In this document: positions 37,552 through 43,430 of the stretch, piece after piece | Numbering within the stretch: position 1 is the first letter of the stretch | Layout of the letters: each line of letters opens with the position of its first letter | NCBI RefSeq assembly: GCF_041956535.1 | Contig: NW_027192200.1 | Coordinates: forward strand, 766,737-817,480 | Reading direction: 5' to 3' | Source: Calcarisporiella thermophila CBS 279.70 | Taxonomy: Eukaryota; Fungi; Calcarisporiellomycota | DNA: 50,744 bases | Translations under genes and position numbers: made by a program | The notes under the pieces: model-generated | Told to the model about the DNA's origin: nothing | The model's database searches: none | Seen by the model: only the letters and a program-made list of their open reading frames with translations

Positions 37552-38672
37552 GGCTCCATATCGCTTATTACATGGTTGTTTTGCAATTTCCCATAGTGTT
37601 TTTATTAATAAAAATACAATGCTATTCTTTTTTTTATCGCTCTCATTTCACACTCAAATGCGGACGAAGCGATGGGAGAACAACGTCGCCTCACCACAAG
37701 AAGAGTTGCTTTGAAAATTAATTTTGATCTTTCATCCACATAGATGCCTACGTCTCAATTGAACGCATTATGCCTGGCAAAAAAATAGTAGGGCAGTTAG
37801 AGCTCAAAAGACCAGCGGACTTCCAGGATACTTGGTATATACAGATTCATGTGGCTTATCGCTGTGGCGAACCCACCTTGGTGTTTCGTTGTACAAGATC
37901 ATCCTATCGATGCTTGCCCACACTCTGGCAACAGTATGAAGTCCACAATGGGTTAGTATATTGGTGAAAGAACAAGGAGAATGAGAGATGATATTAGCAC
38001 CAAGATTGAATTGGTTTAATTTTATGGCTAAACAATGAAAATCAAGTAATAATCATTTTATTAATCTCTCTTTTTCCAAGCTTTGTTAGTGGATACTCCG
38101 TTCCTACGACATCAAATCCTTTGTATACATCACTAAATTGATGCTTGGTCACTGAATAAAGCCTAATAAAAGTACTCATTTGAGAGTAATTGCAAGAGAT
38201 ATAAAAAGTCCAGCCACCTACACGATGAATAGGACCAGTTTTCTCGTATACCTTTAGGAGACACCCAATATTATAGCTCACCTCTCAAGTATATATTTGC
38301 TTGTAAGTCTCCCAACAATCCCATGGGCGTGACGTTAGAAATGACAACATAATGCCTTTTTTTACGATATATATTTAATATCGCAATCCACAAATGTATA
38401 TCAAAACACTGAGAGATTATTACATATGCTGAATTGACTTGAGCTAAATCGAAATTCTATCGAAAAAGTTTTGCGAGCGTATCAGTTTATAACATATGAT
38501 CTATAACTGGGTAAAAATACACTTTAAAATTATAAAAAAGCAAAAATATTACAATACACACTTTTCAAATACAATACCCCGATAATCCACCTTTACTTAA
38601 TAAGTCAAGGTAGCATATATTCCTGAAAATATTATAGAGGTAGTAGTTTTTTATCGACATACTCTCATCCCA

Positions 38673-38729
38673 TTTTCAAATGATTTTACTGAATTATTAA
38701 AACAATTAATTCAGTAAAATCTTTGAAAA
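38673..38729. repeat. AT-rich hairpin (15-bp perfect arms, about 23 bp with one bulge) upstream of Uma2 gene 1
   Basis: ttttcaaa-t-gattttactgaatta ... taattcagtaaaatc-tttgaaaa. Confidence 0.85.
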
Positions 38730-38835
38730 CCTAATATCAATTTGTGACTGGTAAGCGGCCACTTTGTATGCACCATTAGATTAAATAGCAGAAACTGAAG
38801 ACGCATATATTGAATAAAGACCGAATTTTTTAGAG

Positions 38836-39798
38836 ATGTCTTGTCCAGCTTCTTCACGGCATAAAATCACTCAATTACCAACTGTATCAGTGACAGAAGT
38901 ACAAAATGATGTGATGCCCTCAATAAACGGTGAGATATCGGACTTGATTGACAATTACAGCCCGGATCGCGTTTACACCATTGAGCAATTTGAGAAAATC
39001 AACGATTGGCTTAAAACTCACGATATAGTGATTGATGGAATTCCAATTAGCCACTTCGAACGCGACTTGAAGGGTAGGCTTATCCCGATGCCTCAATCGC
39101 CAATAAGTAAAGAAGCCGTAGTTGCAGAGATTCTTGGTCAATTGAGACGTTGGAATATCTGTACTCAACAAAATGGTATCGTCACCAGCTCCCAAGGAGG
39201 TTTCAACTTTGCTGTATTAGGGGGGAGAGAGATCAAGGCCCCGGATATTGCCTTTACTCCAAAAGAAACATTTCGTGCTTTAGACCAGCAACAGCTTAGA
39301 ACTTTTCAAGGCCAACCTTTTCATCCCACATTCGTGGTTGAAGTGGAAGACGTTTCAAGACCCTCTAAACTGGCTGAACTCACTGAGAAGTTCAAAGGAA
39401 GCTATTTTCCTGCTGGCGTTGAGTTGGGTTGGTTGATTGATCCAGATAACAAGAAAATATACGTGTTCAAGAAAACTCGAAACGGAAGTGTGCGACGATA
39501 TTCCCATGAGTGGAAAAACGTTAGTGGAGGTAACGTGTTGCCCAGATTTGTGTTAAAAATTCGATTAGTGGAAGATGTTATATCTCAGGTTTGTTGTTAT
39601 TTTATTTTTATTTTTTTACTCTGCAATACAAGTCTGATATTACATATTGTTATGATGTAGGAACCATCGGAATCTGGTTCATCGTCTCAAGGAAACCTTG
39701 AGATCCACTGCCCCGAATGTACTGAGATTTTTTCTGATCGATTTAGTTTCGTTAGTCATTATGAAGATGAACATGCGCGAAAGTGGCATAATAGTTAA
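38836..39798 (+). CDS. Uma2/DUF820 family PD-(D/E)XK putative endonuclease with C-terminal C2H2 zinc finger, copy 1 (exons 38836-39588, 39661-39798; 296 aa)
   Basis: YTIEQF, FERDLKGRLIPMP, SSQGGFNF, IKAPDIAF, PTFVVEV, YFPAGVELGWLIDP..KKIYVF, GGNVLPRFVL. Phase-0 intron cag|gt...tag|gaa leads to LEIHCPECTEIFSDRFSFVSHYEDEH (C-x2-C-x12-H-x4-H). Confidence 0.9.
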
Positions 39799-40794
39799 AA
39801 GAATCAGATATATCTGTAATTTATGCTATTTTCATCCGCGTATCTCGGAAGTCAGTCAAGGCAACCTGAGTATCCTGGATTTACTACAACACCATCTAAA
39901 GAGAAAATGGTACAATTCGCTACCTGGAAGAACTTATATGCTTTATACATATAAATTTATACCTTTTTTGCATTTGCTTGCTACGATGTTATAATATTTT
40001 CCTTTACATCATATGTATCTTAGTTACAGTAGCAATGCTGCATTCCATTTATCTACACAATGCCAATACTCCTTGATATATATCTTGCTTCATCCATACT
40101 CTGTACATATTCACTTAATAATAATGTTTTTACTCTCCTTTCTGGCAGCTATTCTTGGCTGATACCTTTGTCTCTTTTCCATATTGATCCCTCTTCTACT
40201 GCCACTTCTCGTTAAATAGGTAATGTTTACACCTCCCCTCCTGTCCTGCTCTGATGATGAATGAACTAATTACCAGTTATTTTACGCACTTCGCTTCTGA
40301 TAAACTCTCGTAGTTTAGTAGTAGAGCCTCTGAGATTCTCATTACTATGGTAATCTAAAGATGTGAATAGAGCCAAAAATGTCGATATTTTATTTACAGC
40401 TTTCAGGTTCCAACTTATGCTATTCAAAGTTTAGTACCTTCATCTGACATCTCAGGCTCGTCAAAGTCTTCTCCCGGGATATCCCTCTCTATAGCACAGT
40501 GGACAGCATTTGAGGCCTGACTCTCTGTTCCGTCGGAGTTTCTGCTCGATTGTGTTGCAATCTCTTTTGATTTTACTAATTGATATGCACCTAAATCGTA
40601 GAATTTGAGTATAAAATAAGTGTGATTATGGGTGCCATTAATAATGGTAAATTAACTGATTACATACGTTCATTATATATCAGCTGTTTTATCCATTCGT
40701 ATATAACCCAGTCGCCCTGAGTGGGAGGGAAATATTTCGCCTCACTTTTAAACTGAATTAAAATTGCTAAAAAAATGAATTCTATTTGCTTACA

Positions 40795-40950
40795 AAGATC
40801 TTATTACCCCGCCCATATTAGATTCCCTCTAATTTTGGAAAGCCACCCTGCGATATCTACAAGTTAAACGAAGGATTCAAAGCCGAGGAATGGAAGAACT
40901 GGGTTGCCTAGCATTGGCTTGATTTTCTTGAAGAATACATGCCTCCGAGG
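40795..40950 (+). mobile_element. Fragment of a CACTA/En-Spm-like (Tnp2-type) transposase, degenerate
   Basis: Reads IPSNFGKPPCDIYKLNEGFKAEEWKNWVA*HWLDFLEEYMPP, matching the IPxxFGRxPR...FKAEEWxNW...LP motif recalled from fungal CACTA-like transposases. Contains in-frame stops. Confidence 0.65.
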
Positions 40951-41042
40951 TAAATGATTTCGCTTGTTTTTTTTTAATTTTACAGAATTTCAAGAGTGAT
41001 ATACGCTTAATGTTATTTTTTTAAACGGAGAATTATAGGGAG

Positions 41043-43430
41043 GATGGCTTAGCATATTGGTGAGAAAATAAGGACGATGAGAGATGATATTAAAACCAAG
41101 ATTGAATCAACTTGATTAAATTTTATGGTTAAACAATGAAAATCTAGTAATAATCTTTAAATTAATTCCTCTTTTTACTAAACTTGTTAGTAGATATTAT
41201 GTCCCAACCACATCAAATCTTCACTATTCATCGCTAAATTGATACGTGATCTCTGAATAAAGCCTAATAAAATAGTTCATTTGAGAATAATTGCAAGGTG
41301 TAAAAAAGCCCGGTCGACACAATGAATAAATCCAGTTTCCGCGTATAGCTTCAGGAGACTCCTAGTTCTATAGAGTACCTCCCAACATCAATGGTATTTG
41401 TTAGTAAATGAACTCAGCATTTCTATGGACAAGTCGTCATCAATGACGCCTTAGTGCCTTTTTTATGAGATATATATCTAATTGCGCAATCCACGAATGT
41501 ATATCGGAGCACTAAGTGATCTGTGCATATACTGAATTGACTTGAGCTAAGCCGATATTCTATCGAGAAAGTTTGGCGACCGTGTAAGTTTATAATATCC
41601 TATTTGAAACCAATTTATTTGCATTCGCACTCTTAAATTCAATAGTACCCATAGATAAAGGAGTTCATGTGAATTATGGCACGATTTGGTGTGTGTACGA
41701 TTGAGTGCGCAAAATTGTAGAATATAAAGGTTACGAGCAACTTGAAATTAATAAATTTTAATTGATACAATAGTAAGAATGTAAAATATGCCTTGTGTTA
41801 AAGTTGAATAATTAACTAGCTTAGCAGCAAATAGCCAACTAAACGATAATTTATAGTTATAACTGTGTAAAATGAGAGTTACTCTTTACAATAATAATAA
41901 AAAAAGCAAAATGTTACAATACACACTTTTCAAATTCAATATCCTGATAATCCTGCTTTTCTTTATAAGTCATAGTAGCATATATTCCTGGGAATATTGT
42001 AGAAACAGTAGTTTTATTATCAACATATTCTCACCGCAATTTTGAAAGATGTTTTTTTAAGCTGAAATAATAGAGGTCAATTGTGGCTGGCGGCCAGTTT
42101 GTATGCGCCATAAGATTTAATGGCAAAAACTAAAAAAGCATATATTGAACTGAACATAAAATTTTCAGAGATGTCTTGTCCAGCTTCTTCACGGTATAAA
42201 ATCACTCAATTACCAACTGCATCGGGGACAGAACCACGAAAGGATGCCATGTCTAAAGTAAACGGTGAGATATCGGACTTGATTGACAACTACAGCTCGG
42301 ATCGCGTTTACACCATTGAGCAATTTGAGAAAATCAACGATTGGCTTGAAACTCACGATATAGTGATTGATGGAATTCCAATTAGCCACTTCGAACTCGA
42401 TTCAAAGGGTAGGCTTATCCCGATGTCTCAATCTCCAATAAGTAAAGAAGCCGTAGTTGCAGAGATCATTCGTCAATTGACACGTTGGAATATCTATTCT
42501 CAGCAAAATGGTATCGTCACCGGTTCCCAAGGAGGTTTCAACTTTGCTGTATTAGAGGGAAGAGAGATCAGGGCCCCGGATGTTGCCTTTACACCAAAAG
42601 AAATATATCGTGCTTTAGACGAGCAACAGCTTGACACTTTTCGAGGCCAACCTTTTCATCCCACATTCGTGGTTGAAGTGGAAGACGTTTCAAGTTCCTC
42701 TAAACTAGCTGAACTCACCGAAAAATTCAAAGAAATCTATTTTAATGCCGGCGTTGATTTGGGTTGGCTGATTAATCCGGCTAACAAGAAAATCTACATA
42801 TTCGAGAAAACTCTAAACGGAAGTGTGCGACGATATTCTCATGAGTGGAAAAACGTCAGCGGAGGTAATGTGTTGCCTAGATTCGTGTTGAAAATTCGAT
42901 TAGTTGAAGATGTCATATCTCAGGTTCGTTCTTTTTTTTTTTGTCTTCGCTACGCAAATCCGATATTACATATTATTATGGTATAGGAATCGTCCGAACC
43001 AGGCTCCTCGTCTCAAGAAAACCTTGAGATCCACTGCCCCGAATGTACTGAAATTTTTTCTGATCGATTAGATTTCATTGATCATTATGAAGAAGAGCAT
43101 GCACGAAAATGGCACAAAGGTTAATAATGTCAGATACACCTCCATTCCATGCTATTTTCATTTGCGTATACTAGTAGTCAACCAAAACAGCCTGAGAATT
43201 CTGGATTTACTACAACGCTTGTGAAAGAAAAAATGGTATAATTCGCCAGCTGGATACGTTTTATAACTAACCTATATTTGCTTGCTACGAGGTTGTAAGA
43301 TTTTCTTTATACCAATTGCATACCTTTATTTAGGTAGTAATGATGCATTCCCTTTTTCTACACATACCCAATAATCCTTAATATATAGCTTGCGCCCATC
43401 TATGCTCCATATATATTCATTTAATATTAC
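41043..43430 (+). repeat. Tandem segmental duplication, unit 2 (carries Uma2-ZnF gene 2; extra about 270 bp near 41595-41860)
   Basis: Collinear with 37945-40110; similarity breaks after gtttataa (about 41595) and resumes at tataactg.gtaaaa (about 41860). Confidence 0.9.
42171..43124 (+). CDS. Uma2/DUF820 family putative endonuclease with C-terminal C2H2 zinc finger, copy 2 (exons 42171-42923, 42987-43124; possible upstream in-frame ATG at 42120)
   Basis: Paralogue of copy 1 with the same intron position: IRAPDVAF, PTFVVEV, GVDLGWLINP; exon 2 LEIHCPECTEIFSDRLDFIDHYEEEHARKWHKG*. Confidence 0.9.

What the first reader, a model, noticed from the sequence alone, without database searches (positions are those of the whole stretch)
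38836..43124. Candidate natural 'zinc-finger nuclease' pair: Uma2 PD-(D/E)XK domain spliced to a C2H2 finger exon, tandemly duplicated in a fungus
Seen in sequence: two intact paralogous genes, each a Uma2/DUF820 domain (APDxAF...VVEV...GVxLGWLIxP) joined through a conserved phase-0 intron to a separate 46-codon exon. That exon encodes a Ser-rich linker and a canonical C-x2-C-x3-F-x5-hydrophobic-x2-H-x4-H finger, which the ORF track misses because it needs splicing. Established: Uma2 is a restriction-endonuclease-fold family that is mainly bacterial (greatly expanded in cyanobacteria), with little functional characterisation; C2H2 fingers are eukaryotic nucleic-acid/protein binding modules. 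Inference: a bacterially derived nuclease fold acquired a eukaryotic targeting module by exon gain and was amplified. It could act in defence, as a toxin/effector, as a selfish element, or in RNA processing.
Basis: partly seen in the sequence, partly recalled or inferred. Interest (0 to 1): 0.8.

Follow-up and report, generated by a model that had tools for sequence, protein, structure and literature searches.

The report
Uma2 nuclease–zinc finger gene pair
Two neighbouring genes in the fungus Calcarisporiella thermophila each encode a bacterial-type Uma2 nuclease domain joined to one classical zinc finger; they belong to an old, unstudied family shared by early-diverging fungi and oomycetes, not a recent invention of this fungus.

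Summary
Both genes are intact. Each has a 251-codon Uma2 exon (Pfam E 7e-18 and 4.5e-20), a GT..AG phase-0 intron (72 and 63 nt) and a 45-codon exon. That exon encodes an acidic Ser-rich linker, one C-x2-C-x12-H-x4-H finger and a short basic tail.

- NCBI already holds exactly these spliced 296-aa models, as uncharacterised proteins.
- The same architecture occurs across Mucoromycota, and in Rozella, a chytrid and many oomycetes (Phytophthora, Plasmopara, Peronospora).
- The Rozella and Thraustotheca genes have no intron and are contiguous, so the fusion is ancient. The intron is no evidence of exon capture.
- Only the A/B/C2 amplification is specific to this lineage. The genome has 7 loci with both parts, two with stop codons in the Uma2 part.
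- The scan also flagged other copies in this genome.

The catalytic residues E98, D137, E169 and K185 are conserved. The fold matches solved Uma2 structures. A homodimer model passes its controls. Both exons show purifying selection.

No RNA run was listed, so splicing rests on comparative evidence. No paper on the family was found.

Best reading: a dimeric nuclear nuclease tethered to nucleic acid by a finger and a basic tail. Its biological role is unknown. Moderately interesting.

The parts
38836..39588 (+). Copy A exon 1: disordered N-terminus (codons 1-43) and Uma2 nuclease domain (44-251)
   Evidence: Pfam Uma2 E 7.1e-18. Equals P0001 residues 1-251. 1wdj E 5e-8.
39589..39660 (+). Copy A intron, 72 nt, GT..AG, phase 0. 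Its only in-frame stop is its terminal TAG.
   Evidence: The site after ..SQ is the same in Diversispora and Entomortierella.
39661..39798 (+). Copy A exon 2: acidic Ser-rich linker, one C2H2 finger (C268, C271, H284, H289), basic tail, TAA stop
   Evidence: zf-C2H2 E 0.0013. Equals P0001 residues 252-296. Beta-beta-alpha fold in the model.
42171..42923 (+). Copy B exon 1: N-terminus and Uma2 domain
   Evidence: Pfam Uma2 E 4.5e-20. Equals P0002 residues 1-251.
42924..42986 (+). Copy B intron, 63 nt, GT..AG, phase 0
42987..43124 (+). Copy B exon 2: linker, C2H2 finger, basic tail, TAA stop
   Evidence: zf-C2H2 E 0.0021. Equals P0002 residues 252-296.
37948..40100 (+). Duplicated unit A: about 0.9 kb upstream, the gene, and about 0.3 kb downstream
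   Evidence: Direct-repeat families D1-D8; alignment.
41044..43420 (+). Duplicated unit B
   Evidence: The downstream similarity to the copy on contig C2 runs to about 43795.

Best explanation
Shown: the two genes are tandem paralogues of a conserved eukaryotic family. Each encodes about 296 aa in four parts: an unconstrained N-terminus; a Uma2-type PD-(D/E)XK nuclease domain with a complete, conserved catalytic set (E98, D137, E169, K185); a flexible acidic Ser-rich linker; and one classical C2H2 finger followed by a short basic tail. In Mucoromycota a conserved phase-0 intron lies between the domain and the linker. The fusion is old and is shared with Rozella, a chytrid and oomycetes. Only the A/B/C2 amplification is specific to Calcarisporiella.

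Inferred mechanism: the Uma2 domains pair through their N-terminal helix and strands into a symmetric dimer that cuts nucleic acid, most likely DNA, with a divalent metal. The two fingers and their basic tails tether the dimer to the substrate. The tail reads RKKRK, like a nuclear-localisation signal, in most members. Each finger would add at most a short (3-4 bp) sequence preference. The acidic Ser linker begins right after a near-invariant SQ. It may be a site of phospho-regulation or may mask the basic module. The biological role (genome maintenance or defence against foreign DNA) is not determined.
For: Gene model:
- The exon translations equal the annotated proteins P0001 and P0002.
- dN/dS between copies A and B is 0.40 for exon 1 (0.32 in the core) and 0.23 for exon 2.
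- All 7 loci in this genome where the Uma2 part survives are followed by a finger exon.
- The intron site is conserved in Diversispora and Entomortierella.
- The intronless Rozella and Thraustotheca genes encode the same linker and finger contiguously.

Nuclease:
- Pfam Uma2 at 65 and 72 bits.
- Foldseek's top hits are all solved Uma2 structures: 1wdj, 6okh, 9y1l, 3ot2. The model has mean pLDDT 81.8.
- D137 is invariant and E98 and E169 are at least 90% conserved in 22 Mucoromycota proteins. The Lys that aligns with K185 is invariant in the chytrid, oomycete and Rozella set.

Dimer:
- ipSAE 0.41 against a best control of 0.00. This mark was reached by 21 of 30 proteins solved as pairs of one chain and by 0 of 23 solved as single chains. 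The three runs agree in at least 61% of their contacts, and the partner's pLDDT is at least 77.

Finger:
- C, C, H, H are invariant in 46 distinct fingers.
- 26 of 37 family fingers hit zf-C2H2 at E <= 0.01.
- A family profile best matches DNA-binding fingers such as Aart, PRDM9 and CTCF.

Distribution. Tree.
Against: - No activity, substrate, localisation or expression data exist for any member. No Uma2 protein has been characterised biochemically in the papers searched.
- No RNA run was listed, so splicing in this fungus is inferred, not observed.
- One finger alone rarely gives useful DNA specificity, and single C2H2 fingers can also bind RNA or protein.
- Copies A and B end in RKWH.., not the RKKRK tail of most members.
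- The dimer pass may reflect the model's memory of solved Uma2 crystals.
- Both fingers score below Pfam's gathering score.
Confidence: 0.6

Rival explanations
1. The nuclease is real, but the finger and tail are not a DNA-targeting device. They would serve as a nuclear-import, protein-interaction or RNA-binding tail. The enzyme would then act on DNA structures or on RNA without sequence preference, for example in repair or RNA processing.
For: There is only one finger per chain. Helix position +2 is mostly Y or H and +6 mostly K across the family, a shared rather than diversified surface. The tail looks like an import signal in most members. 23 of 37 fingers also hit zf-Di19 and 2 hit the dsRNA-binding jaz type. 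A cyanobacterial DUF820 protein was listed among candidate nucleic-acid binders in Grad-seq (PMC8136920).
Against: The family profile best matches classical DNA-binding fingers. Two fingers in a dimer could read a short site. 4 of the 10 differences between A and B in exon 2 fall in helix positions -1 to +6 (P 0.034, one post-hoc test).
Confidence: 0.25
2. The genes are the nuclease of a selfish or mobile element, and spread as a cassette.
For: This genome has 7 loci with both parts, two of them with stop codons in the Uma2 part, plus a degenerate fragment. One copy lies 3 kb from a contig end. The copy on contig C2 shares promoter and 3' flank with A and B. The pair sits in an AT-rich gap between CRM1 and an RSP5-like gene. 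Glomeromycotina carry many copies.
Against: No terminal inverted repeats flank the units. There is no transposase, intein or intron-homing context. Both exons show purifying selection. The Mucoromycota sequences form one supported clade in the tree. The Rozella gene sits among ordinary genes, and the Thraustotheca gene next to a P450 gene.
Confidence: 0.07
3. One reading: a recent bacterial transfer into this fungus captured a zinc-finger exon and was then amplified.
For: Uma2 was listed as bacterial only in the 2012 survey. The nearest prokaryotic hits are roughly 190-210-aa proteins without a finger; those that carry names come from Bacteroidota. The finger lies on its own exon.
Against: The same fusion occurs in at least four distant eukaryotic groups and is intronless in two of them. 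All eukaryotic sequences fall on one side of the tree against the bacterial outgroup (100/100). Calcarisporiella also has a second lineage, on contig C6, that groups with other Mucoromycota.
Confidence: 0.03
4. The Uma2 domain is catalytically dead and the protein is a DNA-binding regulator.
For: No activity has been shown for any Uma2 protein. Copy B has N in place of the D in the W-x-x-D-P motif.
Against: E98, D137, E169 and K185 are conserved across groups that diverged long ago. The D-to-N change is also seen in Diversispora and is outside the catalytic set.
Confidence: 0.05

Closest known systems
Bacterial Uma2 / DUF820 / TT1808 family (PF05685; PDB 1wdj, 3ot2, 6okh, 9y1l)
   Same: Same domain by HMM and by fold. 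The acidic catalytic residues align and the Lys lies one residue off, beside an alignment gap. The predicted dimer passes its controls.
   Different: The bacterial proteins are about 190 aa with no finger, linker or basic tail. The eukaryotic clade adds these, and in Mucoromycota an intron as well. Function is unknown on both sides.
Engineered zinc-finger nucleases (FokI cleavage domain plus C2H2 arrays)
   Same: A PD-(D/E)XK-fold nuclease and a C2H2 finger lie in one chain, joined by a flexible linker. Dimerisation is likely needed. These points are from established knowledge of ZFNs.
   Different: There is one finger, not 3-6. The finger is C-terminal. The linker is acidic. The catalytic domain is Uma2, not FokI. 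No sequence-specific cutting has been shown.
R2-type non-LTR retrotransposon proteins (N-terminal C2H2/Myb plus a restriction-like endonuclease)
   Same: They are a natural combination of C2H2 fingers with a PD-(D/E)XK endonuclease. An R2 structure appears as a weak fold hit (9dou, E 0.09).
   Different: There is no reverse transcriptase, the domain order differs, the endonuclease is not Uma2, and no mobile-element context is seen here.
PADLOC candidate defence system PDC-S03
   Same: Weak HMM matches at 33.6 and 37 bits. This shows that bacterial Uma2-like proteins have been proposed as single-gene phage-defence candidates.
   Different: It is only a candidate and only prokaryotic. The eukaryotic family has extra modules and a different cellular setting.

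Membership tests
Uma2 (PF05685) | HMM score above the curated cut-off | tested here: met
   65.1 and 72.3 bits against 27. The genome-wide scan gives the same loci.
Uma2 (PF05685) | Restriction-endonuclease-like fold matching solved Uma2 structures | tested here: met
   Foldseek hits: 1wdj at E 4.7e-13, 6okh, 9y1l, 3ot2. Model mean pLDDT 81.8.
Uma2 (PF05685) | Conserved catalytic residues (helix Glu, PD Asp, strand Glu, helix Lys) | tested here: met
   E98, D137, E169 and K185 are conserved.
Uma2 (PF05685) | Nuclease activity | not testable with these tools
Classical C2H2 zinc finger (PF00096) | C-x2-4-C-x12-H-x3-5-H spacing with the two conserved hydrophobic residues | tested here: met
   C, C, H, H are invariant. 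F8 is present in 40 of 46 and F/M/L14 in 44 of 46 fingers.
Classical C2H2 zinc finger (PF00096) | HMM score above the gathering cut-off | tested here: not met
   19.5 and 18.8 bits against 25.2. However, 26 of 37 family fingers hit at E <= 0.01 and the family profile hits Aart, PRDM9 and CTCF fingers.
Classical C2H2 zinc finger (PF00096) | Beta-beta-alpha fold | tested here: met
   In the model, short strands lie around 266-274 and a helix at 278-290. Mean pLDDT per 10-residue block is 76-89 across residues 261-290.
Classical C2H2 zinc finger (PF00096) | Zinc and nucleic-acid binding | not testable with these tools
   Needs biochemistry.
Zinc-finger nuclease (functional class) | A finger array long enough to specify a unique site | tested here: not met
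   Each protein in which a finger was found has a single C-terminal one.
Zinc-finger nuclease (functional class) | Dimerisation of the cleavage domain | tested here: inconclusive
   The homodimer model scores 0.41 against a best control of 0.00 and passes the mark, but the pass may come from memory of solved Uma2 crystals.
Mobile element or homing nuclease | Terminal repeats, target-site duplication, or an intron or intein host | tested here: not met
   No inverted repeats flank the units. The copies share ordinary flanks only.

The most novel reading that the evidence does not exclude
The family could be a natural, dimeric 'finger-guided restriction enzyme' of eukaryotic nuclei. It would be a bacterial nuclease domesticated once and kept only in groups that are mostly coenocytic (oomycetes, chytrids, Rozella, Mucoromycota). 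Finger-helix residues specific to each paralogue would set different short cleavage sites. The expanded copies in Calcarisporiella and Glomeromycotina would then act as a diversifying defence against foreign or selfish DNA.
Probability: 0.12. Interest if true: 0.8.

Novelty: new variant of a known kind. Interest (0 to 1): 0.5.

Why it matters
Uma2 is a large nuclease family with no function assigned, and the 2012 survey treated it as bacterial. Here it forms a conserved eukaryotic branch that has gained a classical zinc finger, an acidic linker and a basic tail. The branch is found in plant-pathogenic oomycetes and in mycorrhizal and other early-diverging fungi. No named hit came from Dikarya, animals or plants. 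That gives a tractable entry point to Uma2 biochemistry. It is also a clear case of a prokaryotic nuclease being fitted with a eukaryotic nucleic-acid-binding module. If the finger sets the cleavage site, it would be a natural counterpart of engineered nucleases. The patchy distribution also raises a question of transfer between fungi and oomycetes.

Tried and rejected
- RNA evidence: the look-up of sequencing runs listed no RNA run, so read laying was not used and splice junctions were not observed.
- A scan of bacterial genome contigs with family motifs found no confirmed relative. The donor lineage is therefore unresolved beyond 'the named nearest profile hits are Bacteroidota'.
- NCBIfam gave nothing.
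- Literature searches for Uma2, DUF820, the P. infestans locus tag, and combinations with zinc finger or horizontal transfer found no study of the eukaryotic family.
- Transposon reading: no terminal inverted repeats.
- Secreted toxin or effector reading: by eye, the N-termini of copy A and of the chytrid and oomycete proteins show no hydrophobic leader.
Only 4 of 10 exon-2 differences lie there.
Whole-protein steps used the database proteins P0001 and P0002, which equal the exon translations piece by piece.
Full report
**Observation.** The region reads as described.
- Copy A has exon 1 at 38836-39588, an intron at 39589-39660 with GT..AG ends in phase 0, and exon 2 at 39661-39798.
- Copy B has exon 1 at 42171-42923, an intron at 42924-42986, and exon 2 at 42987-43124.
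- Copy B's longest ORF starts at 42120, but that upstream ATG is not shared with copy A.
- Pfam gives Uma2 at 7.1e-18 and 4.5e-20 for the two first exons.
- The second exons hit zf-C2H2 at about 1e-3, below the gathering score. That shortfall for these two single fingers is offset by the family-wide evidence below.
The database already holds 296-aa proteins (P0001, P0002; Calcarisporiella thermophila VTP21DRAFT_1075 and _1076). These equal the exon translations piece by piece, and I used them by id for whole-protein steps.

**Is exon 2 really part of the protein?** No RNA run was listed, so the evidence is comparative. It is strong.
- dN/dS between A and B is 0.23 in exon 2 and 0.40 in exon 1. 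It is 0.32 in the domain core and 0.95 in the first 44 codons.
- The seven loci in this genome where the Uma2 part survives are each followed by a finger exon. One of them is the copy on contig C2, whose NCBI model stops short of it.
- The intron site, right after ..SQ in phase 0, is the same in Diversispora (77 nt) and Entomortierella (69 nt).
- Many metagenome gene calls read through '..SQV', which is the same GT.
- The Rozella allomycis and Thraustotheca clavata genes encode the domain, acidic Ser linker, finger and basic tail in one uninterrupted frame.

**What it is.**
- The word search found 73 relatives. All named ones come from Mucoromycota: ten genera of Glomeromycotina, Mortierella and Entomortierella, Jimgerdemannia, and Calcarisporiella. 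About half of the relatives carry the C-terminal finger.
- A profile of the Uma2 domain, run against 1.84 billion representatives, gave 1444 hits at E <= 1e-3, 290 at <= 1e-10 and 70 at <= 1e-30.
- Cluster look-ups and a second word search put further finger-bearing members in Rozella, in the chytrid Boothiomyces, and in oomycetes. The oomycetes are Phytophthora infestans, nicotianae, rubi, citrophthora and lilii, Peronospora, Plasmopara and Thraustotheca, plus a Lagenidium model that lacks the finger. One Plasmopara record is named 'restriction endonuclease type II, Zinc finger C2H2-type'.
- No named hit came from Dikarya, animals or plants. Only the best hits are listed, so absence is not shown.
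- The first prokaryote-like hits score 77-85 bits. They are roughly 190-210 aa and have no finger. Those with names are from Bacteroidota.
- In a maximum-likelihood tree all eukaryotic sequences fall on one side of the Bacteroidota outgroup (100/100). They form three groups: Rozella; chytrid plus oomycete; and Mucoromycota (96/87).
- Copies A, B and C2 are a lineage-specific clade. The copy on contig C6 groups with Entomortierella, Paraglomus and Jimgerdemannia.
- With so few bacterial rows the tree does not identify a donor.

**Anatomy and likely mechanism.**
- The AlphaFold model has mean pLDDT 81.8. Residues 1-29 and 254-261 are disordered. The core is confident, and the end of the chain is a confident beta-beta-alpha unit.
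- Foldseek's first seven hits are all Uma2 structures, and phmmer finds 1wdj at 5e-8.
- D137 is invariant and E98 and E169 are at least 90% conserved among 22 Mucoromycota proteins. The Lys aligned with K185 is invariant in the chytrid, oomycete and Rozella alignment. I therefore expect an active metal-dependent nuclease.
- A homodimer model of residues 44-251 scored 0.41 against a best control of 0.00. This mark was reached by 21 of 30 proteins solved as pairs of one chain and by 0 of 23 solved as single chains. The runs agree in at least 61% of their contacts and the partner's pLDDT is at least 77. The interface is symmetric, through residues 44-62, 72-80 and 90-114. The pass may come from memory of solved Uma2 crystals.
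- The finger is classical. C, C, H, H are invariant in 46 distinct sequences. Helix position +2 is mostly Y or H and +6 mostly K.
- 26 of 37 fingers hit zf-C2H2, and a family profile best matches DNA-binding fingers.
- The linker is acidic and Ser-rich in every lineage. It follows a near-invariant SQ, and most tails read ARKKRK. Reading these as phospho-regulation and nuclear import is inference only.
- 4 of the 10 A/B differences in exon 2 lie in helix positions -1 to +6 (P 0.034, post hoc). This is a hint, not proof, of divergent recognition.

**Context.**
- The pair sits in an AT-rich 8.5-kb gap (34-37% GC) between the 3' end of CRM1 and an RSP5-like WW-HECT gene.
- The duplicated units are about 37948-40100 and 41044-43420.
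- The copy on contig C2 shares about 240 nt upstream and 0.3-0.7 kb downstream with them.
- No terminal inverted repeats flank the units.
- The genome also holds two loci with stop codons in the Uma2 part (contigs C17 and C3) and a degenerate fragment on C5.

**Comparison with what is known.**
- By HMM, fold and catalytic residues the domain is a member of Uma2.
- Uma2 has no assigned function in the papers searched. The 2012 PD-(D/E)XK survey lists it as bacterial (PMC3424549). A 2014 domain census noted one fungal Uma2 protein (PMC4102429).
- PADLOC lists Uma2-like proteins only as a candidate defence system, PDC-S03.
- No paper on the eukaryotic finger-bearing branch was found.
- The resemblance to engineered zinc-finger nucleases is architectural: a PD-(D/E)XK domain, a C2H2 finger and a likely dimer. 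It fails on the defining multi-finger array.

**Verdict.** The fusion is neither recent nor local, the intron is not evidence of exon capture, and the spliced models were already in the databases. What remains is a real, widespread, unstudied variant of a known nuclease family with an unusual distribution. The scan also flagged other copies in this genome.

Noticed in passing
L003 (G000:C2:1468-5220, minus strand): The copy on contig C2 has an intact 60-nt GT..AG intron and a finger exon, yet its NCBI model (P0003, 253 aa) ends at '..ISQAL' without the finger. This looks like a mis-annotated 3' end. The copy lies 3 kb from a contig end.
   Followed up: partly
window 39589-39660 and 42924-42986: Both introns are multiples of 3 (72 and 63 nt; the C2 copy's is 60), and their only in-frame stop is the terminal TAG. 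Intron retention would therefore give a product without the finger and with a hydrophobic tail of about 20 aa. A block C(T/C)GATATTAC is conserved in all three introns and may be the branch site.
   Followed up: no
G000:C17:376698-377319, C3:1369164-1369812, C5:24430-24732: These are further family loci with stop codons in the Uma2 part (2 TGA on C17, 1 TAG on C3) or heavy decay (C5). The C17 and C3 loci still show a readable finger exon.
   Followed up: partly
L017 744-765 (Boothiomyces macroporosus): The chytrid gene model has a 22-nt GTAAGT..TAG 'intron' at the same domain/linker boundary. That is too short to be credible, so it may hide a frameshift or a mis-called junction.
   Followed up: no
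P0005 (Paraglomus occultum) and P0046 (Jimgerdemannia flammicorona): These two are near neighbours in the tree (branches 0.15 and 0.14) although they come from different subphyla. Contamination or transfer is possible.
   Followed up: no
L016 4747-6394 (Entomortierella lignicola): The gene downstream of the Uma2-finger gene encodes a Crinkler-domain protein (PF20147).
   Followed up: no
window 38674-38729: A 23-nt inverted repeat (87% complementary, 10-nt loop) lies about 110 nt upstream of copy A's ATG. Most of it falls where the promoter alignment with copy B breaks down, partly in a 31-nt gap.
   Followed up: no
window 40780-40960: The spacer between the units has a short stretch that reads like a transposase relic (..KAEEWKNW..). 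No stop-free piece of 30 aa or more covering that stretch turned up to test against a profile.
   Followed up: no
window 42760-42785: Copy B has N for D in the W-L-I-D-P motif. The same change occurs in the Diversispora orthologue, so it is tolerated in the family.
   Followed up: partly
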